From Lepidodermella squamata (lineage: Eukaryota; Animalia; Gastrotricha), in NCBI GenBank assembly GCA_047495785.1, contig JBLDXI010000003.1, positions 4,340,001-4,404,000 of the forward strand: a DNA stretch of 64,000 nucleotides, given 5' to 3'. The notes beneath the pieces are model-generated. The model did not search any database and was not told the DNA's origin. It saw only the letters and a program-made list of their open reading frames with translations. Positions 6,740 through 63,749 of the stretch are shown piece after piece (within the stretch, counting starts at the first letter, position 1; each line of letters opens with the position of its first letter). A program made the position numbers and the translations under genes.

Positions 6740-7802
6740 ACGATGGCATTCCTGAATTTGTTCTACGAGACAGCATTAGCTGCCCGGCAATGAACGCCGC
6801 TTTGGTCTCCCTATTTAACGGCATTCTCAAAGGTGATCTACTCCCAGGTGACTGGAAAACCAGTGTTGTAACCCCAATTCATAAGTCGGGCGAGAAACAG
6901 CTTCCTGAGAATTACCGTCCTATCTCGATTCTACCTGGCTGCCTGAAACTCTTCGAACGCTGCCTAGGTGAACAACTGAAACCTCGCCTGAACAGCTTCC
7001 TGTCAAAATATCAGTTCGAATTTCGCAAACACCACTCGACTAGCGGCTGTCTGGTATCGCTCGCTGAGAAATGGCTCGTAGCTGCAGCACAAAACAAGTA
7101 CGTCGCCACTGCCAGCTTGGATCTTTCAAAGGCGTTCGATTCGCTTGACCCTGCTGGGGTTATCGAATCTCTCCGTTCGTTTGGTCTTGGACCCGAAGCC
7201 CTGAACCTGTTCACGGACTATCTATCTATCCGTCACCAGAAGGTTAAAGTCGGCAGCATCTCCTCGTCGCCCTTGCCAATCAGATATGGTGTCCCTCAAG
7301 GGAGCGTCCTCGGCCCTCTTCTCTTCACCGTCTATGTTAATGAACTGCCAGAGACTATCAACGATTCGCGGTTTTCCAGTGCCTGCATGGCGAAGCACCA
7401 GTCGAGCTAATCGAGCTCTTCAGGCCGAAGACAGAGGTGAACCCAGGACTTCGCAGTTCCTCTAACGGCAGCCTTAAGGCCACGCAGTCCGACAGTGTCA
7501 CCCAAGACCGAACTTTCCTCATCCGCGGCTCGAAGGCATGGAGTCATACCGACCCCTTCATTCGTAAGCTGACTAGCTCGAAAGCCTGTCGCAAAGCCGC
7601 CTACTTGCAGGAATTCTTCATCGAGCAGGTGTCTGAATGGACCAAATAGATCATAGCTCTATTTTTATAATTTATTTTCGTATTCTATTGTGCCACTCTG
7701 CGCCTAACACCGAATCATCGGCGACAGGTTTCAACTCATCAACCCAAGCCCTGTTAAATCACCAGAATTGGTGTCAGGGTCTAACATCCATCCATCCATC
7801 CA
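6740..7802 (+). mobile_element. L2/CR1-clade LINE: RT fragment with internal deletion plus 3' tail
   Basis: WKTSVVTPIHKSG..NYRPISIL, LDLSKAFDS and GVPQGSVLGPLLF; the ORF breaks before YADD; ends in (ATCC)n. Confidence 0.92.
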
Positions 7803-8078
7803 TTCACGTTGAGATAAAACAATGATGAGATGCTTTGGAACCTAAACGCTAACGGCGGGGGCGTCGACGACTCATCATCGGCACCATCAATGTGTGCGGC
7901 TGAAATGTGGCTCTCAAGAAGGCTTGTATCCTCGGAGTCAACACTCCGGTGATCAGCGATGCTGATGGTAAATACATGTCCATTCTACCTTATTCAAGGT
8001 TCGTTAACAACGGAAGGCCACAGGTACCTTCAAAAAACGGTCTTAATCATGTGACCTTCATGTGACGGTCATAATTAT

Positions 8079-8930
8079 CCATATCCAGCGAGAACTTGAT
8101 AGCGAAAGTTAGCTAGTATGGTGGCTAAGAAGGCTGCAAGATGCAAGGTCGATATGTATTTTTGACTTGCCGATTTACTTGCCGCCGGTGTTTGGTGGTT
8201 TTTCCCGATATCGAATTACTCTTTCATTGTTTTTTTCTGATTTAGACATTTTAAATCAATTGAACTTGAAAAACTGCATAAAATGGCATTGGCATATGCA
8301 CTCGCATGGATAGCTGATATTGTTGTGATTTCGGCTACACAATCGTGCTGAAGTCCGTGAACATTTCATGAATTCGGCAGTTTCCAGCCTACAGAGTCCT
8401 TTGGTGCTTTCTAGAATGCGAAAGGCGCAGTTCGTTGTGTTCATCCTGAATTATTATTACCATTTCGGAAGCCGGCTGAATCGAACTCACCGAGAGTGGC
8501 TAGCAATATCAAGCATGCTAATGCTGCTTTTTGCAGTTTGTTTAGCTGACTACAATATTGTCCATGGGCATCATCCGGATACAAGTTCAATCACAACAGC
8601 TTGTCGAAATTTTATCAAGCGATGAAAAAGAATGCGATGTTTTGAAAACGCTGGCGTGAAGCGTTCCATTGCCGCGGATCAGAAACCTACTCTATGTACG
8701 ACAACCTCTGAAAAACGGAAAAAAGAAAGAATTCGTTGCCGCAGAAACGGAACCACCTAGAGAAAAACATCGACACGCTGAGATCGGGCGATTTCGATTG
8801 ATCACGTTGAAAACTAAATCTCCGTCGACAGCAGACTGTCTTTTTCGCTGTTAGAGTTGTTTCTTGGAACCGAGCCCACCTAGTTGGCACCTCAATCGGA
8901 AGATGAGCAGCATTTGGAGTCTTAAGACTA
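8079..8930 (+). mobile_element. Deleted copy of the hAT-derived composite at 25129-27140
   Basis: 8079-8640 aligns to 25129-25700, and 8641-8930 aligns to 26818-27140. Confidence 0.85.
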
Positions 8931-9001
8931 GGCATTTGATTTCCGCTTCTTTTTGCCAGTACCTTCAATTAACACCTTGCTCGAAACTCTAAAATAATAC
9001 G

Positions 9002-10512
9002 TTGCTTCAGGCCGATGGCCGCCCTATTCCGCCTGAGAAAATTGACGGGTTCTATGTCATCTCGATCACAATCGGCGCTGCTCAATTCACACATCGCTTT
9101 CTCGCGATTGTCGACTTGTCCCGTGATGTCATTTTAGGCCAGGACTTCATCTACCCGTCGGTGTATTCAATTAGCGTCAGAGGAATGTGCAAGTCCTTGT
9201 CTTACCAGGACGCTCTTGGATGGCGCCGTGTTGTCTACGGCCGCGCCTTACACCGCCGTCTCGCCCGCTTTCTTACGCTGAATTGGTAGCGATTACGTGC
9301 CGCTCGACACCGCGTCTAGTCGTTTCGCTGTTCGTGGCATCAACGCCGTAGGCTCCGTGGACAAGCCCTCCTGTGTGTGGAGGTCGGCTCATCGACGCAG
9401 CATCTTTCTGCTGTAGTTGTGCCTCACCTCCGCGCCCGCTCGTGCTGGGCCGCAATCACCTGTAGCACCGCCGCCAACTCGTATGGTCGCCGGCTGCGCT
9501 AGTTTCGCCTCGACGACGCCACATCTCGTCGCCTCGCATGTCCTCGCCCCGTGGGGTGGCCGCATTGCTTACGCCGTGCCAAGCCCCAAGACGTCTGGCG
9601 CACACCTGCAGCGGCTGACGGAAACCGAAGTACTTGCCGGTCTTACACGCTCGCCAGACGCCATCATGGCCGCCTACCAGGTCGATTGCCGGCGCGCTCG
9701 ACTCGAGTTGCGATTGATCGGGCCCGTACTGTACTCAACACATTCGACAAATTCAACATCGCTCTATCGGCTAAGAAGAGCGAATTCTTCGCTAAACGGG
9801 TTAAATTTTGCGGCCGTATCTACAGCGAGAAGGGCTGCGAGGTCGCTGACAACCACCTTGAAGCGATCTCCGATTTCCCTCGCCCTACCACGAAGGCAGT
9901 CCGCTCCTTTGTCGCACCGCGAATTTTCTGCGACACCACTTACCCGACTTCGCCCGCGTCGCTGAGCCGCGCTGTCGCCTCATGGGCGACAAGTTTGTGT
10001 GGACGCCGGAGTGCGAAAGCGCTTTCCAACGCTTGAAGACCGCTCTAGCATCGCCGCCCGTCCTCGGCTTCCCGAACTTTCGCCTGCCTTTCCGCCTCAT
10101 GACCGACGCCAGCGACTACGATTTGGGCACGCTGTTGCTGCAAGATCAGGGCGGTAAGCCGCGCATCATCACGGCTCACAGCCGCCTGCTGACCCCGACC
10201 GAGCGCAATTACAGCTCGCTCGACAAAGAGTGCCTTGCGATCGTCTTCGGCCGCGAGAATAACTGGGAGATGTTGCTCGGGCAGCCATTTGTCATTGAGA
10301 CCGACTGCCGTGCACTCCTGTGGCTCAACTCGATGATGACGCCCTCCAAGCGCCTCTTTGGCTATATCGAGAAGCTGTCGGGCCTGGACTTCACCATCGT
10401 CCATCGCCCGGGTCGCCTCAACTACGCCGATGGCCTTTCGCACCAAATGCCTGATGATGAGTCGCCGCACGCTCTCCGCAGCCGTCGCCTTCAAACAAAT
10501 ACGCCTCGCTAG
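9002..10512 (+). mobile_element. Gypsy/Ty3 pol remnant (protease end, RT C-terminus, RNase H), frameshifted
   Basis: DVILGQDF; KKSEFFAKRVKFCG; WTPECESAFQRLK.L.SPPVL; TDASDY..G..L.Q; ERNYSSLDKECLAIV; ETDCRAL; HRPGRLN.ADGLS. Confidence 0.93.
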
Positions 10513-42700: not shown

Positions 42701-45700
42701 ACAATAATTTCGATCAACCGCCACGTATTTATGTGGTGAGACTTGGCGCGCCGGTAGCCTTGTGCCGCGCTGATTCATGCGAACGCCGAGGCCGTTTTTC
42801 AACGCATGTTTTTCTCGGACTCGATGTAAATTTTAAATTTTGCAGCCATTGCTCGAAGACAGCGTCCCGGCATTCGTTATATATTTTTAGTAGGCATGGC
42901 ATACGAATATTGCGCGGCGCTAAAACACCGATTTCTTTGCGCATTGTTTGTTTCGAAGAGAAAAAAATGTGCCGCGTGTAACAGCATGCAATATCGGCTG
43001 CTGACTTGTGAGCAGCAAGCGCGCCCGATGCATAAACTAGCACCCAGCCTGTGGAATCAAGCGACTTATTCAGTCTCAATTTCTATGGCACCAGCGCTGT
43101 TACCACTGCCCGCTGACAATGTCTGCCGAGGGTCGACGCGCGCGCGTTACGTGATTGCGCTTTCTATTTTCGTTCGCGCGCGCGCTGACCAATCAGTGAA
43201 ATTGTTCGCTAGTAAGGTGTGAAATTGGAAAAGAGCTGGCTCATTTTGGTTTTAGGCCCACTAAATTCTTGATCAAAATGTCTTGTTTCATAGTTGGTGA
43301 GGTAATAATTGTTCATGAGTCATCTGTTGTGTTTGTATGTGAGCGCGTGCGGTGGTAGATGAAGGCGTTTACTGCACTGCGGTCATATGCCATAACTTTT
43401 TCAGTTAGCGGCTGCCGATGATATCCCTTGTACATAATGCGTACTAAAATTGAGGGATAAATAGATGATATTGCAGTTCCGCAAAATTATTGTCATCTCA
43501 TAGAACGACGACTAATACCTGTAACCGTTGCAAACAGCAAGTGTCTGTGTGTCTGTGTGTGCGTTTTATTGAGGGCAATAATTTTCACTCGCCGCACGAT
43601 GAGTGAGTCTCTTGCGCGGCGATATGGCGTTCAATTAACAGCAGAAATGTGGTTTTCAAAAAATAGGAAACATTGAAACTTGTCTCCGCACTCGTTTAGA
43701 CGGTCGCCGACTAGCAAATTTCGGCTCATTTCACTCGGCTTTTTCACCTTGACTTAGTTTCAATTAATTGGCATTGCTGCGCTCGCCAGTTGTAAGCTGT
43801 TTCTTGCGCCTCGGTTATAACAGCGTGTTGTGCGTGCAATAGTAATAAAATTATTGCTGTGCGTGAAAATGTGTTGCTGTTTTATGAATGAGAATCTACG
43901 CGCACAAAGTGGCGCGTATTATTAGCCCCCGAAAGAATATTGAGACATGAGAGCGCTCATTTTGGGTCATTTGGCTCGTAAATTTTAAAGCTCAGTTCAT
44001 CGGCAGCCCTGATTTAAAGAAACATCATTTGACGTCTATCCCGGGTTAAAATAATATTATGGTGGAAAGCTCGTCTTTACTTTTCCTCCCGCCACTTTGA
44101 TAGGATATTGATCACTACGCTCTCTTCGCTTATTATCGGTGATGATGACATTTTTCATATATTGAAATTTTGTTATTTTTATTTGTAGAAACGAGCGAAG
44201 GGCCAAGTTCTTCTCGACAGCGTGTTGCAGTTTCTTAATTTATTGGAGAAAGATTTCTTCGGCTTGAGCTTTAAAGATGAAAATGGCGTTCGCTATTGGT
44301 TGCACCCCGAGAAGAAAATAACGCAGCAACTGAAACGCAGGCCGCCAGTTTTTGCGTTCGAAGTGAAATTTTACCCGCCAGAGCCATCGCAGTTGCAGGA
44401 AGACATCACGCGTTACATGCTATGTCTGCAAATCCGCAACGACATTTTCAGCGGTCGCCTGCCGTGTTCATTTGTCACCCACGCCCTGCTCGGGTCGTAC
44501 ATGGTCCAGTCGGAAATCGGCGATTTCGACCCTCTGCAACACGGGGACACCAGCGAATACATCCGCGCATTCTCGTTCGTGCAGAACCAGACGAATGAAC
44601 TGCTGGACAAGATTGCCGAGCTGCATCGCACGCATAAGGGCCAAACACCGTCTGAGGCAGATACCCATTTTCTGGAAAATGCCAAGAAGCTGGCGATGTA
44701 CGGCGTCGATTTTCATGACGCAAAAGATTCCGAAGGAATTCCGATTCGTATTGGCGTGTGTGCCTCGGGACTGCTGATCTACCGTGACAAACTGCGCATT
44801 AACCGCTTCGCCTGGCCTAAGATATTGAAAATTTCCTACAAACGCAACAACTTTTACATCAAGATTCGCCCGGCCGAGTTCGAGCAGTTTGAAAGCACCA
44901 TTGGCTTTAAACTCGCCAATCACAAACTTGCTAAAAGGCTGTGGCGAACTGCTGTCGAACACCATACATTCTTCCGCCTGAAGGAGCCGGAACCCGTCAA
45001 GACCGGCACCGGCTTCATCACCCTCGGCTCGCGCTTCCGCTTCTCGGGTAGAACCATTCACCAGGCTCTGGAAGCCGGCCACCGCATCGAACGCCCGCCA
45101 CCCGAATTTGACCGACGAGAGGGTGGTGGTCACAATCGCACACCTCAATCGGCCGGGTACGGCAGTCACACGAATGGTAGCGCGTATGGCACGGGTCCGC
45201 GCGGCGGCGCCGGCGGCTATCACCACCAGCAACCAATCGACTACGACGACCAAATGATGGGAACTGAACATCGCGGCGCGGGATATGCGACGATGCCCGG
45301 TCCTGGTGATCAACTGCAACGCGGACCAATTCGCGGCCAACAACAAGAGGTGAGTCCTGTCGCTAAATTGTCACTACGTTTTAGGCCTGAATTATTGAAT
45401 CTTGTAGCTATAGCTTCCTTGTTTTCCTTCCTTGTGCTTTCGTGACGTTTTTCTCTCAAATGTAGTGCCTAGCTTTTAGTAGTAGTAGTAGTTGAACCTT
45501 TTAGCTGTGCTTGAATTTTGTGCGTGTGTGATTGATATGCTCCTTGAAGCTTCATTGTTGGCATGGCGCTCGAGATCACGAGTGCTGCCTCGCTCGCCTT
45601 CAGATGCGTCAGTTCCAACACCGTCGGCTGTGTCCTTTATATACCGACCAGAATACCAGTTACCCGGTGTTGTTCATGCCGGGCCCCGGCATGGGCCCGA

Positions 45701-53846: not shown

Positions 53847-54331
53847 TCGCGATTCCGGATGTCCCCCTAAAATCGCGGAACCAATTTCGATTAAACCGAG
53901 GTGCGAATTACCTTGAGTCGCTCCGAATCCGGAAAATTCGCACTAGGTGCTTTCCCCTAGCCGAAATATTCAGTTTAGCAGCACAACAACGTTGGCGAGA
54001 TGCGAGGCAAGGGGATCGCAAACGCGAAGGCCGTTTCGTATTCTTCGGATACGCGCTGTGCGCAGTTGGCACCTGTTGCTGATGACTGATGCGCGATATC
54101 GCGACCGGGACAGCCACTTGCATTTTACATATAAATAACTCAGCTTCAATTCAACTGCAAATTAAACGCACTTTATGTAATCCAGCCCTACTAATTATAT
54201 TAATCGTATCAATTAATAGAACTATTATATTTATCTGATATATATATTCGTCAAAGCGGTGCACCGGTGTAGCTCAATTCGCACACAGGACAGGTGCTTC
54301 TTGTGTGTTTTATTCGTGGCCCAAAACAAAG

Positions 54332-57300
54332 ATGCGACACTTGGCTTGGATTTCTGCCGTAGTTGTTATGGTTCGAATAACTTCTGGCGGAGATGGCGGA
54401 GATAAGGAGGAGGATGAATCAGCTTGGAACAGCATTCGTAAATTGGCGTCTCTCATACAGAACGACGACGAAAATTTAGTCTGCGTTGATTCTGTGGACA
54501 ACACATGGGTGAAGATTTTGCGCTTTGTCGGGGTGAACAAGAAAAAGTGTTTTGAGATCGCTGTCACTCCCGGGAGGAGAAAACTCAATTTCGAGGAAGC
54601 TAAGCAGTTGTGCCGTTACCGAGCGATTGATTCGCAATTAGCTGTGATAAAAAACGCCGTAGACCACACAGCTGTTGGATACGCTCTGGGAAACAGTTCA
54701 ATCGAACTCGATGATGAAAATGGTGCGATGATAGGATTGCACAGGGTTATCGGATCTTGGAAATGGATTTCTCCGCGATTTCACGAAAAACGCACTCTTT
54801 TTCATCAAGGATGTGTAATTTCATCGGCCAATGGCAACAATAATAATGCTTCCGAAATCCCCAGGTCAAGTGTCGCATTTGAGTGTGCAATTAGATGCAA
54901 CAGCTCAAGTTTTCGTTACGCATCATCTGGTATCTATAACAGCAAGGAATGTCGGTGTACGAACGTTATCGACTGGTCGCGGGTTATCACTTGTAGTTTG
55001 AGTTCGGAGCTGCTGGGGAGGAACACGACATCGAGCGTTTATGCGGTATTTGATTTGAAGGGGATGCAAAACATGAGCATCAGTGAATCGCCTAAAGATA
55101 AATTCGGCTTCTTTCTTGAACCATGGACTACTAACATGAATCTGAATGATAGTTGGAATAGCAGTACTGCATCGAGCGGATGCCTTGCGCTTGAAATGGA
55201 CGCGATGGGAAATTCCACATTCGTCCAACGCGATTGCTCGATAAAATTGCCATTCATTTGCAGAAATTTTTCCGCAGACATCAACTGCAGCATCGATCGA
55301 AATGATTCATCATGCTATCTATTGCGGGATGACGCGCAACAATTTCACTTGGCAGTGGAAGGATGCCATCGATTAAGTCTTGAACTAGCACCAATAATCA
55401 AAGCGGAAGATTTGGCGCTTGCTCATAAATCAACCCTTAATTATTTAATTTTCAAAAACGAGACGACATCTAATTTTTCAATCGAAACCAGTATAGCGCA
55501 ATTCTGGATAGGAGCGAACAACTTTGAATATCTGTGGTCTGACGGCAGTAGTCTAGCTCCTAATGATTTTACTCGCTGGAATTCATCATTCAACGTCGGA
55601 ACTGATTTGGATTGTGTAACTTATTCCAATGACGAAGAATCAGCCAGCAGTTATGTGTAAGGAAAATTAAGAAAAAGCTTGTTGCATAACTCATTTGTGA
55701 TTTTTGAAGTTGGTCGGCGCATGCCTGTTCCTCAAATATTGTAGTTTGTTCACGGAATATATGGGAGCTGCCGCCAGGTTTTAACTTCTCTTCTGAAAAT
55801 GAAACGACAACCAGGAACTACAATTATACTACGGCAAAACATAATGCAACAAGCATCGCAGCTAGCAACAGAACAACAACTTTGATAGGCGAATCAACAA
55901 CTACTCCATGCAGGTTGTTTAGCACATCCACGGAAGCGGGAGTGAAAATAGCTACAAGGAAAATCGACTGTTTTACCACAGGGGCGACCCAGACAAAACT
56001 CCCTGCGACGCAGTCTTCTCTAATTCCCAGCTCACCTTTTCCAGGAACCATTTCCGCCGCGCCGCCCGAAAACCCGAATTCTCGAGGCGCTCAAGGTCCT
56101 CCGGGGCCACAAGGACCCCAAGGCGGATCAGGTCCTCAGGGATTGCAAGGACCCCAAGGCGGATCAGGTCCTCAGGGATTGCAAGGACCCCAAGGCGGAT
56201 CAGGTCCTCAGGGATTGCAAGGTTGGCCAGGTCAATGCGAGATCTCGTGCATTCCTTCGCTAATTATAAGCGTGATCAGTCTTGGCTGTGCAATACCTTC
56301 CGCAGTTTTAGCTATCAAAAACTTGAGAGAAAATTGCAAATCCAACTCTGCGACTGTGACACCGACTGCAGACCAGATGAAGCCTAAAATACCGCCACCG
56401 ACTGCAGACCAGGTGCAGCCTAAAATACCGCCACCGACTGCAGACCAGATGAAGCCTAAAATACCGCCACCGACTGCAGACCAGGTGCAGCCTAAAATAC
56501 CGCCACCGACTGCAGACCAGGTGCAGCCTAAAATACCGCCACCGACTGCAGACCAGGTGAAGCCTAAAATACCGCCACCGACTGCAGACCAGATGAAGCC
56601 TAAAATACCGCCACCGACTGCAGACCAGATGAAGCCTAAAATACCGCCACCGACTGCAGACCAGATGAAGCCTAAAATACCGCCACCGACTGCAGACCAG
56701 GTGCAGCCTAAAATACCGCCACCGACTGCAGACCAGATGAAGCCTAAAATACCGCCACCGACTGCAGACCAGGTGCAGCCTAAAATACCGCCTCCGACTG
56801 CAGACCAGGTGCAGCCTAAAATACCGCCACCGACTGCAGACCAGATGAAGCCTAAAATACCGCCACCGACTGCAGACCAGGTGCAGCCTAAAATACCGCC
56901 TCCGACTGTAGACCAGGTGCAGCCTGAAGTCCGGATCACTGAGACTTTGACTACGCGCCATTTGGAGACAATTGTAAGAAATCTCATCAATGAAATGATG
57001 GTCGAGGCATTCTGTCGTCCGCCTGAATCGAACCAGATCAATGTAACTTGGAAGGTTTATATGCAGGAATGGATTTCGTTCTTGTTGGAGAATCACATAG
57101 GAACACAACTAGGACCTCAACCTGAACGGGGAAATGGAGGACAGGACCCTCCAGATACGCCTGACCCACCAGTCCCTAAACGTCGCATCTATTCGAAGCG
57201 TCGAGGCAAGCTGACTGTTCCAGTTTTTCTCAAACATTCGAGCAAAAAATTAACGAAATCAGCTAGCCGCAATATCGGAGCAAAATATTGCCAGCAAAAT

Positions 57301-57447
57301 TGGGGAAGCTGTCAAATGAATGAGTCGATTTACGGAGATCGGAATGATCTTGAAGAACAACAGTCTGTCGAACATTTCCATTATTTGGGTACCTTTGTTC
57401 CGCTGAAAAGCAAGGACCGCAGTATGAGTAGTCTTGAACAATGGTAG
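54332..57447 (+). CDS. Type I membrane protein: CTLD with inserted WSC-like domain, second CTLD, Thr-rich stalk, short collagen, TM, Pro-rich repeat tail
   Basis: Signal peptide; NFEEAKQLC, IGL, DCSIKLPFIC; FWIGA..WSDGS; one intron (~55657-55709) joins the two long ORFs in frame; ~14 Gly-X-Y triplets; TM IPSLIISVISLGCAIPSAVLAI. Confidence 0.85.
56362..56926 (+). repeat. Coding minisatellite, 36-bp unit, ~16 copies (PPTADQ[MK/VQ]PKIP)
   Basis: Tandem ACCGCCACCGACTGCAGACCAG[ATGA/GTGC]AGCCTAAAAT, no spacers. Confidence 0.97.
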
Positions 57448-58832
57448 GAAACCCGCCTACCATCGATAACATGGATAAATTATTACTCATATCTGGTAAA
57501 ATTTAAAGGGTCTTGCCTGTTAGCCTGTTGCCTGTTAGTGGAACCAAATTTTGGAATTTTCAATGGGCCTAAAACCACTTTTTGAAGCTTTCAAGGATGT
57601 CTTGATTGATCAGCATACCTACCTACTAACTCGAAATAAAACATTCCTTTATCTATTTATTTTGAAGCTTTTACACCCATGAGAGGGTAGAGCTCGACAT
57701 CTTTAAATTCAGCGTGAAATTCTGTGTAATAGACGCATTCTTCACTAAAGAGTTCTTACACTGCCTCAGTTTTGAATACATATTCCATATTCGAAAAACG
57801 AAATGTTGCTTATCTAAAATTAGGTTCCGCAACATGCAGATTAGGTTCCGCAACAGACAAGTTCGGACACACACCGAAGCGCCGTCCGAAGTGTATATCT
57901 ATATCTATAGATTTTGGTTTTGTGACACCGCTGTGATTATCGCTACATTTATATATCTATTTGTGTTATTGGCACACTGTGACATCTATAACTTAAGAGT
58001 GATAATGCGCCCTAAGCCCAACGTTGGCCGGCGCGGAAAATATTTTACAAATGAAATACACGGCTTGTTTCTGTCTCATTTCATTTCACATAGTATCTTA
58101 TATTGGTATCTTACCTATATAGTATAAGTCTCAATAAATTTGAAAAATTTGAAAATTGAAAATTGTTTTTCGCAATGCTGAACCAGCGCTAAATAAAAAG
58201 TAGCAATTTGAACAAATGCAGATGAAACAGCTAGGTTGAACCGCGCAGAACCAAGTGATGTGTTGAACGGGAGGTGAAGCATCGTTTCAATTAGCTACTT
58301 TCGTTCACCTCCAAATTCTTTCGGCGCCGATATTCGGGCATTGCATTTTTGCTGTAAAAAAATTCTGTCAGCTGCGATTATATACTGAGTTTATTTGCTA
58401 ATATTGCGCTTGCTTTATTGGAGATTCATCACTGGTCGCGAAGATTCAACAGCAAACGGCGGTTTTTGACCAGCAAAACTCCGCAAAATTAGTTGATTAA
58501 ACACGTGTATACATAGATATATTTGGAATACATATAGGTACGTACAGGCAAAAGAGGAAGAGATTCGCCTGCCTCACCGGCTGAGCAATGCCACCAGGCC
58601 TATTTCGACTCGAGTAAGTATATATAGGTAGCAATTTTAATCAACGTTGCGTATAAGAAATAAAGATCATCTCACCTGTATGTGCATAACAACGATCGAC
58701 GAGCAATACTGATTGAGCTAGTATATAATATGGAGATGTATATAAGAAGCAACCGCACAATATCGGTGGTATACTAGACATGCGGTTGGCGTAGAAAAAA
58801 AGCAACAACAAAAAAATGAGTCATTGTGTGGG

Positions 58833-61800
58833 TCAGAAACGCGGGCCGAATAGCGACAACGGCTTGCGGCGCGACTTGCAGCACCGCGGGCACGTCGCCG
58901 GCGCGTTGCGCTTCGCCCACTCGCTGTAGCAGCCCTCGTGGCACTGGTGGCCACACGACAGCGTCACCGGTTTCGCGGGTCCGCGGGTGAAGCACACGCC
59001 GCAGATGAACGCCGCCTGGCTGCTCGTCGATTCCGACTTCTGACGCGTCAGCACAGGCGGTACTGTTTCGCCGATTTTCACCTTCTCGAAGTGCGACGAC
59101 CGCGCTGCGCCGTTGCTAACAACCAGCACGGGCGAGACAATGTGGGCCCGTGAGTACAAAGCCGGCGACGAGTCGTGACCGCTGAACGACGTTGACTTGA
59201 CTCGCGTAGTCGTCTTTTCAGGGTGATCGCCACTGTTGCCGACGAAGGTCACCTCGAACGGTGATGGCGGTGGCGTTGAGGCGGTGATTGAGTGTCCCTC
59301 GGGTAGCGCAGTCGATTTCGGTAGGGACGATTTCGCGTTGTGGGCATTTCGGAAGGCCGTAAATAGGCAGGCGCCGTCGATAGCCTGCGTCAGCTCGTCA
59401 CAGTCCCGGGCTGCAGTCAATTCGGCCAGCTTGCCCTTGCATGTCGATAGCGAGAAGAGGCGCCCGGTAAATGCCGAAAACGGGATATCGCCTACGTGGA
59501 TCCACTTCACGTGGAACTCGCCCAAAACTTCAGGCCGCCTATAGTAAAATAACAACAATGTAATAAGTTGAATTTTCGCAGCTTCATTGAATACGAAAAT
59601 CGAATTCCCACCTAGAATATTGTCTTGTCCAAAATTCAATAAATTCGGAACGATACCTCATCTACTTTAAAAAAGGGTCGAATGGCTGAAATCGACAGTA
59701 TAAATAAATGTGAAGATCTCATGGGCTCGGTAACATTCATCATAAGAGGGTAAACATATATGCTTAAAATTAATTGAAATAGATTGAAAATATGACATTT
59801 CAGGTCAAGTGGAGACTTTGAAATGTTAGCGAAGCTCCAGAGATTTCCCGGCACATCAAGCTACAATAGGAATCAAGCTGAAAAAGCAACAAAGCTGAGG
59901 TACAAATTCAGATCAAGATAAAAATAGGTACACATACCTAAACCCTTAAACCGTACTCTTATGATGTACGATCCCTTACGTTCCCGGAATTTTTCTCCTG
60001 ATGTCTTAATAATAACGTTACCTTTCAGGAAAAGAGGGTAGCCATGTGGGTACAGCGTTGAAGTTAACGGGAGACGTCATTTCTGCCATGCCGCAGAAGC
60101 GATCGGTGCTCCAGACGGAGAAAAACAGGTACAAGTGCCCGGAACTGGGACTACACAAAAATCATTGGAATGACCTTCGATTATTAAAAACTAGACTCAC
60201 TATCTCGCTCTGAGATTTGTAAAGGCCTTGTGCAGCCGGCCATGCCCGCCCATAGTACCGGCTGCCCAGATGCCTCGTTCAATCGAAGCAACCACGTCCT
60301 GGCCAATAGCTGGTCGGCAGATGAAGTAGCGAACATTCGACGCATCCAGCGAGGCGTCACACGGCGATGCGTGGACATTAGGCTGGATTTCAATCGATGG
60401 CCAGTCGTGTTGATGCTGTTCAGTCAAATCAGACTCGCTGAACACGTCATCGACCGCCGTCAGTTTCGACGAGCCCGACGTCGCGCCTGTACCAACGGCG
60501 ACCGGGCCGATGAGGCGGCGCAGTTGCGGCCAGAATTGCCCGAAACGCTCGCGGTCTTGCAGCAAACTAGCACCCTGCGAGCACAGATCGTGGTAACTGT
60601 GAATCAACCGCCGACCGATCAACCGGTTGTCGATGCTAGACACGATTTCCGTGACATCGGGCGCGTCTTTCGTTAAGGCGGCTCGTCGGTCGGGCGTCAC
60701 GGCTTGGTCACGGATTTTGAAGCGAGCAAACGGCAGGTCTTTGACGTAGAGCCACTCGACGTAGAATCGTGTTTTGTTAGCGAGATGGCGCGCGTGCGAC
60801 GGCACCCAGGCGTCATCTCGCACTTTTTCAACAGCAGACGCCATTTGCGCGACCCCGCAGAACTCCTCGGTGCCACTCAGCGAGAAAAACAAGTAGACAT
60901 TGGAGGAGTTAATCTTCGCCAGTTCAAACGCGTCTGACAGTCGCTGATTAGCGGCTGGCGAGCTGGCAGCCCATGCCGAGTGATAGATCGAGGCTAGGAC
61001 GTCGACAGCGCTAACAGGACGCAGCATAAAGTAACGAGTTGTCGGCGAATTTTCCAGCAAATTGTAGTGATCAGGACGCTTGACTGCGTCACGTAGGCGC
61101 TGGTAGCACTCATCCAGCGTAAGAACTGCGTGGTTCGAGGCGCAAACTGGAGCGGAGGGTGGGCGCTGAACTGCAGCGGCGTAACTCATCGACGAGGGCG
61201 TACCCGCGCCGCTGTCCATGTCTCCGGCTCCGTTGAGGAAGCCGCCTCCTAGAAGACCCAGCGAAGAATGCGAACGGTCCGTTACATCGATAAACAGAGC
61301 CGCTGTGTTGCCCAGGTTCGCTGAGCAGAAATTATTGGCGGCGCTAGTCGGCCGCGGCAAATTCATTCCATCGCCTGAAAAAATGAACCAATTATCCAGG
61401 AAAAACTGTGTTTAATCATTCAAGCTCAACCAATTAAGGAGGACTTGGCCTGCCGCATCATATGAGGAATGCCGCCGGCAGCTAATTTCGTAAGCGTTTT
61501 AAAGTCACACGGGCCGAACGAGCCGGTGATCGGCGGCGTGTCCTCCAGGGCGGCGCCGTGCTCCAACTGCAACACAGCTGTGTCGAACGTGTTCTCGAGC
61601 TGGCGCCGCTCGTCGTCGCACTCGCGCCGAGTTTGCTCAATGAGCTTGGCGATCGGGGAATCATTCGCCCCGCCAGCGGCGACACTGGCTAACGTTTCAA
61701 GGAGATTATCCGCACTTCGGAACAACGCCTTCCAGCCGTCGAATTGGGCTGATACGTAGTCCACCTTAATCACCACAAGAAATCTGTTATCATCTACTAT

Positions 61801-61858
61801 CAAGGTCATGCATTTTGCCAACCTTTTTCTTCACGCTTGGTTCGAAAAACCCGTGCAT
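58833..61858 (-). CDS. Tandem YTH-domain plus C-terminal RING-H2 protein, ~792 aa
   Basis: Exons 61858-61823, 61764-61431, 61374-60201, 60150-60022, 59538-58833 splice in frame (2379 nt). Two copies of RYF..R...D...S...W / YLFFS....FCG.A.M.S / F.V.W..V.D.PF; C-terminal CGVC-x12-CGHQCHEGC-x12-CPRC. Confidence 0.88.
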
Positions 61859-61945: not shown

Positions 61946-63749
61946 TTAATCATTGAAATGCTCTTCTTCATAGTCTAGCAGGTAGGAAACAAGTGATTGA
62001 ATGTTAGGTCGGCAAGCAGGTTCCGTAGCCCAACACCTCAAGAGTAAATTATCAAAAAATTCTTTCGGACACAATAAATTTGGATCATCTTTGCAACGCC
62101 TAGCAACGTAACTCGGCTGGCTTTGAATGGCATGTAAATCTTCCAATGATATTCGCCCGCCAGAATCGATGAACCGCCACATTTCAAAATTGTTCTTTTC
62201 TGCAATAAAAATTGACTATAAAAAGATGCTCGAAATGAAATTAGATTGCGTTACTTTCATAAGGAATAGCTCCCAAACTCAGAACCTCGAAGCCCAGAAT
62301 TCCGTAAGACCAGACGTCGCTTTTATTCGAGAATCTTTTGTGAATCAAAGCTTCCGGTGCGGTCCAGCGAACTGGAACACGCTTATCGGAATGCGACTCG
62401 TAGGTGTTATTATGGTCTAGAACGGCTGACAATCCAAAATCGGCTATTTTCACCTCCAAACGGGAGCTGGGCGTCTCCTGGTGAACTAGGCAATTAGCAG
62501 CCCGCAAATCACGATGGAGGACCTTTTCAGCTTCAAGGTAAGCCATTCCCATGCAAACTTGCTTCAAAATGTCGACGAAATGACGGAATGAAAAATAAAA
62601 GCTGACTCCATTCGTCGCTAGTAAGGAATCAAGCAGAGACCCGAGATTCATAAACTCGGTAACGATAAGGAACGGCTCTCGATCGATGCAAACCCCGACT
62701 AGTTTTACTAGATTTTCGTGCAACACTGATGACATCGTTGTGGCTTCGTCTAAAATCGCAGCTTGACACACGCCCTCGCCAGGCTTCAGTCGTTTCACTG
62801 CAACATCAAGAGAGTTCCATTTCGCTTTGAAAACATCACCGAAATTTCCGCCCCCAATTTGACCAAGTAATTCAACTTCAGAGGCTGATATTGAGATATC
62901 ATTTAGTTCAACTCGCCGACACTGCCTAGGATAAGCCATCGTGAGGCGAAGTTGCCCCGACTGTAACCCAAGGTCGTTTTCTACAATAAAAACGCTGGTT
63001 CTTGGGAGGAAAGCAATGTCGACCGAATGGTTTTACCACAATAAAACATTAGTAATGTATCCAAGTCTGGAAATATTTCATCCGAAACTGCACAGAGTCG
63101 GCCATCGGCCAGTACACGGATCTAAAATCCTTTCAACTTGACCTCTTGGAATACATTTTGCTAAAACAAGCGCTACCTTGATATGAGCCACCTTTCGCTC
63201 GCTTGTCCGTACTGACATCGCCAAGGTTTCTGAATCGCATCTGCACGGCCTCAAAATGAAGGTACCAAGTTGCACATCGGGTCTGAGCAACATTAATTCC
63301 GCATTTCGGCGATTAACGCTAAAAAATGCTCGATTTCCCGACAGTTCGTCGCTTTTCAGTCTGTCGAATTCAAGGTAACGATCAATCCGACTTGCAAAAT
63401 CTTCAGTTCTCCCCAAGGTCATGTAAAGAGAATCCTGATCATCGTTCACCGGTTGGAAAAAAGTTTCAAAATCATCACATGATGGGCTTGATAGGTAGCC
63501 ATTTTCGTCGAAGGCCGAAAATCTTTCCTCATTCTCCAGGACACTTCCGAGTTGGCTATCGGGATTGCGACGCCTCGTCGGTCGGCTGACTTTTGGCGGC
63601 GTCACATAGGGGTACTGGCCCCCACTGTAGTCGTACATATCGTTTGGCCGGGCGAGTTTTTGAGCACGCTTCTCCTTCAGCGGATTCAACGCGCGAACGA
63701 GAGCTCCAACGAAAGAACTCCGTTTTTTCTTCTTAATAACAGCGGACAT
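61946..63749 (-). CDS. Non-receptor tyrosine kinase (SH2 + TK, no SH3 seen), ~545 aa; 5' end uncertain
   Basis: Exons 63749-63177, 63121-63037, 62980-62255, 62199-61946. SH2 GTFILRPC..LAMSV..VAHIKI; kinase GGGNFG, VAVK, HRDLRAAN, DFG, WTAPE, SDVWSYG. Confidence 0.92.

What the first reader, a model, noticed from the sequence alone, without database searches (positions are those of the whole stretch)
58833..61858. Double-YTH plus RING-H2 protein: candidate m6A-reader E3 ubiquitin ligase
Seen: five exons splice in frame to a helical N-terminus, YTH1 (within exon 3), YTH2 (split over exons 3-5, so only partly visible in the ORF track), a Ser/Pro linker and a RING-H2 with all 8 zinc ligands. Both YTH domains keep the first two cage tryptophans (SAW/DAW; GIW/PTW), the YTHDF-type Asp (VDVLAS, QDVVAS) and the FCG.A.M.S motif; the third cage Trp of YTHDF is not evident. 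Known: canonical animal readers (YTHDF, YTHDC1, YTHDC2) have one YTH and no RING. Inference: avid binding to methylated RNA could be coupled directly to ubiquitination of mRNP or ribosome partners. I do not recognise this architecture, but cannot confirm novelty without a search.
Basis: partly seen in the sequence, partly recalled or inferred. Interest (0 to 1): 0.88.

Follow-up and report, generated by a model that had tools for sequence, protein, structure and literature searches.

The report
Conserved double-YTH RING-H2 animal gene

Summary
Five minus-strand exons (58833-61858, GT..AG introns of 58, 56, 50 and 483 nt) splice in frame to 792 aa. The protein has an N-terminal two-helix hairpin, YTH1, YTH2 (split by introns 3 and 4), a Ser/Thr/Pro linker and a RING-H2 with all eight zinc ligands.

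The YTH-RING join does not depend on any splice call. The last third of YTH2 and the RING lie in one open exon.

Two other species carry the same gene: a syntenic metagenome contig (710 aa) and a short genomic contig. Introns 3 and 4 have the same position and phase in both. Domains are conserved (YTH 54-55%, RING 77%) and the linker is not (13%).

Of 25 coding differences in two sequencing runs, 23 are synonymous. One RNA-like run covers exons and 3'UTR but not the 483-nt intron.

YTH1 and YTH2 come from an internal duplication on a very long branch. Both keep two cage tryptophans and the YTHDF-type Asp. The third cage Trp is gone.

No YTH+RING protein appeared among the 150 best of 775 YTH representatives, in 60 ESM Atlas clusters, or in the papers searched. 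m6A reading and E3 activity remain inference.

Earlier unchecked notes of this scan report related YTH/RING paralogs and METTL3 elsewhere in this genome.

The parts
61823..61858 (-). Exon 1 (aa 1-12, start codon)
   Evidence: The ATG at 61858 and a GT donor follow in frame. In the orthologue L002 the same residues run on into the next exon without an intron. The one variant here, at aa 7, is synonymous. Run X1 does not cover this exon.
61431..61764 (-). Exon 2: N-terminal helical hairpin (aa 13-80 = 61561-61764) and a poorly conserved tail
   Evidence: AF2 models helices 2-30 and 37-68 of this exon at pLDDT about 80. It is 31-33% identical to the orthologue. Pfam finds nothing at E<=1. Structure matches in the Atlas are generic helical bundles. 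All 8 variants here are synonymous.
60201..61374 (-). Exon 3: conserved motifs IDVTDRSHSSLGL (61253-61291) and MSYAAAVQ.PP (61160-61189), YTH1, the interdomain helices and the first third of YTH2
   Evidence: Pfam YTH 8.7e-26 with two stretches. It is 53% identical to P0001 over the aligned exon-3 region (A3; 48% by BLASTP over 99% of the query). An X1 piece ends at 60201, the predicted donor.
60635..61048 (-). YTH1 (aa 233-370), with Asp248, cage Trp258 and Trp313
   Evidence: The AF2 core has pLDDT 85-96. Foldseek's best matches are YTHDF1/2/3 YTH domains, E 1e-11, TM by target 0.64-0.78. phmmer finds YTHDF1 at 1e-12. W132, W187 and W205 of the exon-3 ORF are invariant columns in a 46-sequence alignment.
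60022..60150 (-). Exon 4 (aa 515-557): middle of YTH2, including FCGMAEM and cage Trp551
   Evidence: Pfam YTH profile 40-74, 1.4e-7. It is 81% identical in L005 and has phase-2 introns on both sides in all three species.
59376..60337 (-). YTH2 (aa 470-612), spanning introns 3 (60151-60200) and 4 (59539-60021); Asp483, Trp493, Trp551
   Evidence: It scores 93.4 bits as one complete domain against an HMM of canonical YTH domains. It is 36% identical to YTH1, E 1.4e-15, and is the sister clade of YTH1.
58833..59538 (-). Exon 5: last third of YTH2, Ser/Thr/Pro linker (59016-59336), RING-H2, conserved C-terminal tail and stop codon
   Evidence: One open frame holds YTH profile positions 81-126 and the RING. 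The same is true in P0002/L005 and L002. All 11 variants here are synonymous.
58881..59003 (-). RING-H2 finger (aa 737-777)
   Evidence: All eight ligands have canonical spacing. Pfam zf-C3HC4 scores 25.9 bits against a cut-off of 21. It is 77% identical to the orthologue. The best solved relatives are the TRIM25, RLIM and RNF38 RINGs, E about 2e-3.
58700..58832 (-). 3' untranslated region (at least this far)
   Evidence: Run X1 covers it (depth 10-19) but has zero depth in intron 4 and upstream of 61752.

Best explanation
This is a functional, lineage-restricted animal gene. Its protein has an N-terminal helical hairpin, two YTH domains that arose by internal duplication, a disordered Ser/Thr/Pro linker and a C-terminal RING-H2.

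The most likely mechanism is an RNA-directed E3 ubiquitin ligase. The two YTH domains bind RNA, most probably N6-methyladenosine, since both keep two cage tryptophans and the Asp that bonds N1 of m6A in YTHDF proteins. The flexible linker lets the RING bring an E2~ubiquitin to proteins on the same RNP.

Shown here: the gene model, its conservation, purifying selection, the YTH fold of YTH1 and an intact set of RING ligands. Inferred: RNA binding, m6A specificity, E3 activity and substrates. Speculative: dimerisation through the helical hairpin, and a role for the conserved aromatic C-terminal tail (FG.P.F).
For: Gene model and domains.

The YTH-RING join lies within a single exon in three species.

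The orthologue on contigs L001-L004 has the same neighbours (Tyr kinase upstream, C-type lectin downstream) and the same architecture. Exons 1-3 are fused there, and introns 3 and 4 sit at the same position and phase. A third species, L005, is 65-81% identical.

Identity by region is YTH1 55%, YTH2 54%, RING 77% and linker 13%. dN is 0.14-0.15 in YTH2 and the RING against saturated dS; dN/dS is about 0.1 overall. 23 of 25 coding variants are synonymous, and both replacements fall in the interdomain linker.

RNA-like run X1 covers the exons and 3'UTR. It has zero depth in the 483-nt intron, and its pieces end at 61430, 60201 and 59540, which are the predicted splice sites allowing for ambiguous bases.

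YTH1 folds as a YTHDF-type YTH domain. The cage W1 and W2 and the Asp are kept in all YTH copies, and YTH2 keeps the R-D..E motif of YTHDF2 R527/D528.

The RING has V739, W765 and P775 at the usual E2-contact positions. I read these from the sequence using my own knowledge of RING-E2 interfaces.
Against: The YTH pair sits on a very long stem (2.0 plus about 3 changes per column), so a shift of ligand is possible.

The third cage Trp is replaced, and the loop after W2 is 5-6 residues longer than in YTHDF. No candidate third cage residue is conserved except an H/Y/F/L at W2+4. YTHDF1 Tyr397 is Val in YTH1 and Ala in YTH2, and the Arg of the R-D..E motif is lost in YTH1.

No structure of YTH2 could be made, because the spliced sequence has no reference. 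zf-RING_2 scores below its Pfam cut-off. The linchpin position after the last Cys is Cys in this species and Arg in the other two.

The RNA status of X1 is a guess by the tool. No single contig was shown to span all exons.
Confidence: 0.55

Rival explanations
1. It is an RNA-binding E3 ligase whose YTH domains no longer read m6A. They would recognise an unmodified sequence motif (as fission-yeast Mmi1 does) or another modified base, and the retained tryptophans would be structural.
For: The branch is very long. The third cage Trp and the Tyr397 equivalent are lost, and the W2 loop is lengthened and remodelled with its own conserved W[LV]PS motif. YTH2 carries a Trp at the position of YTHDF1 Asn441 in all three species.
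Against: W1, W2 and the N1-bonding Asp are kept in every copy under strong purifying selection. From my own knowledge, YTHDC1 and YTHDC2 also lack the third Trp (they have Leu) and still read m6A. An earlier unchecked note reports METTL3 in this genome.
Confidence: 0.3
2. It is a reader or scaffold only. The RING would be a protein-interaction or zinc-binding module without ligase activity, so the protein acts like an ordinary YTH adaptor.
For: The zf-RING_2 score is below its gathering cut-off. The linchpin residue after the last Cys is Cys here. No activity data exist.
Against: All eight ligands have canonical RING-H2 spacing. The RING is the most conserved part of the protein at 77%. The usual E2-contact residue types are present. 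The nearest solved relatives are active E3 RINGs: TRIM25, RLIM and RNF38.
Confidence: 0.1
3. It is a gene-model artefact or pseudogene: separate YTH and RING genes, or decaying copies, wrongly joined.
For: Prokaryote-style gene callers split the orthologous locus into a 502-aa YTH ORF and a 167-aa RING ORF. X1 does not cover exon 1.
Against: The end of YTH2 and the RING share one exon. Splicing restores a complete YTH2 that scores the same as the intron-free YTH1. Intron phases are conserved in three species. There is no stop or frameshift, variants are 23 synonymous to 2 replacement, and dN/dS is about 0.1.
Confidence: 0.03

Closest known systems
YTHDF-type m6A readers (YTHDF1-3, yeast Pho92)
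   Same: These are the best sequence and structure matches of YTH1. Shared features are the Asp at the N1-contact position, the first two cage tryptophans and the FCGVAQM core motif.
   Different: This protein has two YTH domains instead of one and no long low-complexity N-terminus. The third cage Trp is missing, the loop after W2 is longer, and a RING is added. It sits on a very long separate branch, so it is not a YTHDF orthologue.
RNA-binding RING E3 ligases (DZIP3/hRUL138, MEX3, Roquin, MKRN, CNOT4, TRIM25); named from my own knowledge
   Same: The logic is the same: an RNA-binding module and a C-terminal RING in one chain.
   Different: None of these uses a YTH domain. No Pfam helical domain of the DZIP3/RNF214/RBM44 kind was detected in the N-terminus. 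The RING is only generically similar to theirs.
UHRF1 (SRA domain plus RING); from my own knowledge
   Same: A modified-base reader of the PUA-like fold class (SRA for 5mC in DNA, YTH for m6A in RNA; PMC4738411 places both in this class) is fused to a RING E3. Reading a methyl mark is thereby coupled to ubiquitination of nearby proteins.
   Different: This is an analogy, not homology.
Tandem-YTH proteins without a RING (P0003 Cocos nucifera KAG1326086.1; P0006 MMETSP transcript)
   Same: They have two Pfam YTH domains in one predicted protein.
   Different: Their YTH copies are canonical (about 150 bits each). They have no RING, are not animal proteins, and are unrelated to this clade. The coconut model may be a fused prediction.
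Tandem YTH/RING paralogue cluster elsewhere in this genome (earlier notes s1-379551 and s1-379638)
   Same: The notes report a helical N-terminal module followed by RNA-reader modules, including a YTH, and in two genes a RING.
   Different: They lie on another piece of the genome and no double YTH is reported there. I could not read those sequences, so homology of the N-terminal modules is untested.

Membership tests
YTH domain (Pfam PF04146) | Profile match above the curated cut-off | tested here: met
   Exon-3 ORF 90.7 bits and exon 4 alone 31.8 bits, against a cut-off of 22.1. The spliced protein gives two full-length domains of 94.9 and 93.4 bits against an HMM of 44 canonical YTH domains.
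YTH domain (Pfam PF04146) | Alpha/beta YTH fold | tested here: met
   Shown for YTH1 only: AF2 core pLDDT 85-96, and the top 50 Foldseek matches are all YTHDF YTH domains. YTH2 was not modelled.
m6A-reading YTH domains | Three-residue aromatic/hydrophobic cage (W, W, W or L) | tested here: inconclusive
   W1 and W2 are invariant in all copies. The third Trp column holds Ala in YTH1, and the loop is 5-6 residues longer. An H/Y/F/L at W2+4 is the only conserved candidate. No coordinates were available to check the geometry.
m6A-reading YTH domains | Preferential binding of m6A over A | not testable with these tools
   This needs binding assays.
YTHDF family (orthology) | A single C-terminal YTH after a long low-complexity region, grouping with DF proteins in a tree | tested here: not met
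   There are two internal YTH domains plus a RING. The four YTH copies form their own clade (98/92) on a stem of 2.0 changes per column.
RING-H2 E3 ligases | C3H2C3 ligands with canonical spacing | tested here: met
   C737, C740, C753, H755, H758, C761, C774 and C777 fit the consensus. All are conserved in three species.
RING-H2 E3 ligases | Pfam RING model above its cut-off | tested here: met
   zf-C3HC4 scores 25.9 bits against a cut-off of 21. zf-RING_2 scores 20.9 against 27.3, which is below its cut-off.
RING-H2 E3 ligases | E2-dependent ubiquitin transfer | not testable with these tools
   This needs an in vitro ubiquitination assay.
   Pfam gave no hit at E<=1 on exon 2. The language-model search gave no usable hit. 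The AF2 hairpin matches only generic helical bundles. No DZIP3, RNF214 or RBM44 sequence was compared directly.

The most novel reading that the evidence does not exclude
This could be one member of a lineage-specific, fast-evolving family of modular 'RNA-mark sensor' ubiquitin ligases. Tandem YTH domains would detect methylated, or aberrantly unmethylated, RNA, and the RING would ubiquitinate proteins bound to that RNA. That would be an RNA counterpart of UHRF1, possibly used for surveillance of viral or transposon RNA rather than ordinary mRNA turnover.
Probability: 0.2. Interest if true: 0.8.

Novelty: new variant of a known kind. Interest (0 to 1): 0.62.

Why it matters
In the well-studied animals, m6A readers act by recruiting other factors such as deadenylases and translation or splicing factors. 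None carries an enzymatic ubiquitin-ligase module.

A natural fusion of tandem YTH domains to a RING, kept under purifying selection in at least three species, suggests that reading an RNA mark can be wired directly to ubiquitination of RNP proteins.

It also gives a compact, testable protein: two YTH domains with an unusual cage, and one RING. It shows how far the YTH pocket can diverge while keeping its two key tryptophans.

Tried and rejected
1. The N-terminal domain could not be placed. Pfam gave no hit at E<=1, the ESM Atlas feature search gave no usable hit, and the AF2 hairpin matched only generic helical bundles. A paper search on those names gave nothing useful.

2. Two JGI metagenome scans found no relatives. 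L006 and L007 share only a RING motif and have no YTH.

3. The word-indexed protein search sees only proteins of 0.55-1.75 times the query length, so full-length relatives of about 800 aa were invisible to it. It found one fragment per query.

YTH2 was therefore judged only by alignments and an HMM in scripts.

5. The species could not be named. A neighbouring band-4.1/FERM gene is 84% identical to an unnamed ENA metagenome protein. Its best named matches are a brachiopod, an annelid and amphioxus at 57-70% identity. That suggests a protostome with no close relative in NCBI, and nothing firmer. Searching for the sample accessions in papers gave nothing.

6. The 'opposite strands' joints of run X1 look like joined mates, not biology. 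I used only the piece ends and the depth pattern.

7. dS between the window and L002 is saturated, so no dN/dS is given for that pair.

Full report
**What is there.** The region 58833-61858 carries a minus-strand gene. The ORF list shows four long open frames in series on that strand. Pfam places a full YTH domain and the start of a second in the 388-aa ORF. The middle of a YTH (profile 40-74) lies in a 46-aa ORF. The end of a YTH (profile 81-126) and a RING finger lie in the 268-aa ORF.

Joining these at GT..AG sites gives exons 61858-61823, 61764-61431, 61374-60201, 60150-60022 and 59538-58833. The introns are 58, 56, 50 and 483 nt, and the CDS is 2379 nt, or 792 aa. The RING is C-x2-C-x12-C-x-H-x2-H-x2-C-x12-C-x2-C (C737 to C777), and the linker is 40% Ser/Thr/Pro.

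**Is the model right?** Five independent lines support it.

- The end of YTH2 and the RING share one uninterrupted exon. The YTH-RING fusion therefore does not rest on any splice prediction.
- An HMM built only from 44 canonical YTH representatives scores the spliced protein as two complete domains of nearly equal quality: 94.9 bits for aa 225-361 and 93.4 bits for aa 458-610. Splicing exons 3-4-5 thus restores a whole domain.
- The only close relative among 5.8 billion and 1.84 billion proteins is P0001. It lies on four ENA metagenome contigs with the same neighbours: an SH2/Tyr-kinase gene upstream and a C-type lectin downstream. That locus splices to 710 aa with the same order of parts. There the window's exons 1-3 form one ORF, which confirms the first two joins and the start codon. 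Introns 3 and 4 sit at the same codon position and phase.
- A third species, on Logan contig L005 (protein P0002), is 65-81% identical. It shows the end of exon 3, exon 4 and the RING exon, with the same two introns.
- Selection is clear. Identity to the L002 orthologue is 55% in YTH1, 54% in YTH2 and 77% in the RING, but 13% in the linker. Against L005, dN is 0.14-0.15 in YTH2 and the RING with saturated dS. Of the 25 coding differences seen in runs X1 and X2, 23 are synonymous, and the two replacements fall in the interdomain linker. This holds in exons 1, 2, 3 and 5.

**Expression.** Run X1, which the tool guesses to be RNA, covers the exons and at least 130 nt of 3'UTR. It has zero depth across the 483-nt intron and upstream of 61752. 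Its pieces end at 61430, 60201 and 59540, which are the predicted splice sites once bases shared by exon and intron are allowed for. Run X2 is DNA and covers everything. This supports transcription and splicing. It does not show one molecule spanning all exons, and exon 1 is not covered.

**What the parts are.**

- *YTH1.* The AF2 model of the exon-3 protein has a confident YTH1 core (pLDDT 85-96). Its best 50 Foldseek matches are all YTHDF1/2/3 YTH domains (E 1e-11, TM by target 0.64-0.78). By sequence the order of solved relatives is YTHDF1-3, then Pho92, YTHDC2 and CPSF30; YTHDC1 is not found.
- *Origin of the two copies.* YTH2 is 36% identical to YTH1. In a tree with 44 representatives, the YTH1 copies of two species pair, the YTH2 copies pair, and the four form one clade (98/92) on a very long stem. 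This means an internal duplication before the species split, followed by strong divergence. Long-branch effects are a caveat.
- *Pocket residues.* All copies keep the first and second cage tryptophans and the Asp that contacts N1 of m6A in YTHDF1 (D401). The third Trp column holds Ala in YTH1. The loop after W2 is 5-6 residues longer than in YTHDF and carries a family-specific W[LV]PS[H/Y/F/L] motif. YTH2 keeps the R-D..E motif (YTHDF2 R527/D528), while YTH1 has lost the Arg. YTH2 has a Trp where YTHDF1 has Asn441. The residue roles are from my own knowledge of the YTHDF and YTHDC1 structures.
- *N-terminus.* It models as a two-helix hairpin with no recognisable family.
- *RING.* It is generically similar to active E3 RINGs. 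A conserved basic and aromatic tail follows it.

**How it most likely works.** The best-supported reading is an RNA-directed RING E3 ligase. Two YTH domains would provide bivalent RNA binding, probably to m6A. A disordered linker would give reach, and the RING would recruit E2~Ub to proteins on the bound RNP. The domain identities, conservation and selection are shown. The ligand, the ligase activity and the substrates are inferred. I put about 0.55 on the full statement. About 0.3 goes to the variant in which the diverged YTH domains bind something other than m6A. About 0.1 goes to a non-catalytic RING, and very little to an artefact.

**Comparison with what is known.** The protein is not a YTHDF orthologue. 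It is a YTH-domain protein and a RING-H2 protein by the tests run.

- None of the 150 best of 775 YTH representatives has a RING motif.
- Two of them (a coconut protein and a marine protist transcript) have two YTH domains but no RING.
- All 60 nearest named ESM Atlas clusters carry YTH alone.
- Paper searches for a YTH plus RING fusion, tandem YTH domains or YTH architectures found no description.
- The nearest analogies are the RNA-binding RING ligases and, by logic, UHRF1. In UHRF1 a PUA-like reader of a methylated base is fused to a RING (PMC4738411 for the fold class; the rest is my own knowledge).

**Context from this scan (unchecked notes).** Another piece of this genome is reported to hold a tandem cluster of paralogues with a shared helical N-terminal module and YTH, zinc-finger or winged-helix modules. 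Two of those genes have a RING (s1-379551, s1-379638). I could not read those sequences. If they hold, this gene is a dispersed double-YTH member of that family, and an m6A writer is present.

**Limits.** The spliced protein could not be submitted to the fold or homology tools, so YTH2 has no model. The list of representatives is cut at 150. The species is unknown; it is an animal with short introns, and its neighbouring band-4.1 gene best matches brachiopod, annelid and amphioxus proteins.

Noticed in passing
window 55882-57447 (+): A 521-aa ORF has a short collagen-like G-x-y stretch (Pfam Collagen 1.8e-5, below its cut-off). About twenty tandem 12-residue repeats of PPTADQ[VM][QK]PKI follow. 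Both opposite-strand frames over the repeats are also open.
   Followed up: partly
window 62241-63749 (-): An SH2 plus tyrosine-kinase gene lies directly upstream of the YTH-RING gene. The same neighbour is kept in the orthologous metagenome contigs L001-L003, so the two genes have stayed adjacent across species.
   Followed up: partly
window 6790-10512 (+): ORFs with reverse-transcriptase (RVT_1) and RNase H (RT_RNaseH_2) domains: a fragment or copy of an LTR-type retrotransposon.
   Followed up: no
window 44222-45445 (+): A large exon of a band-4.1/FERM protein (FERM_N, FERM_M, FERM_C, FA). It is 84% identical to an unnamed ENA metagenome protein, and its best named matches are Lingula, Capitella and Branchiostoma at 57-70%. 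This was the only clue to the kind of animal.
   Followed up: partly
window 59361-59681: DNA run X2 shows two haplotypes at about half depth each across the start of exon 5 and intron 4. There are 10 substitutions in 175 nt, and one 1-nt insertion plus one 1-nt deletion in the intron. All the exonic differences are synonymous.
   Followed up: yes
window 54305-55660 (+): A 451-aa Cys-rich ORF has a signal-peptide-like start and many N-x-S/T sites but no Pfam hit. C-type lectin genes lie at the corresponding side of the orthologous contigs.
   Followed up: no
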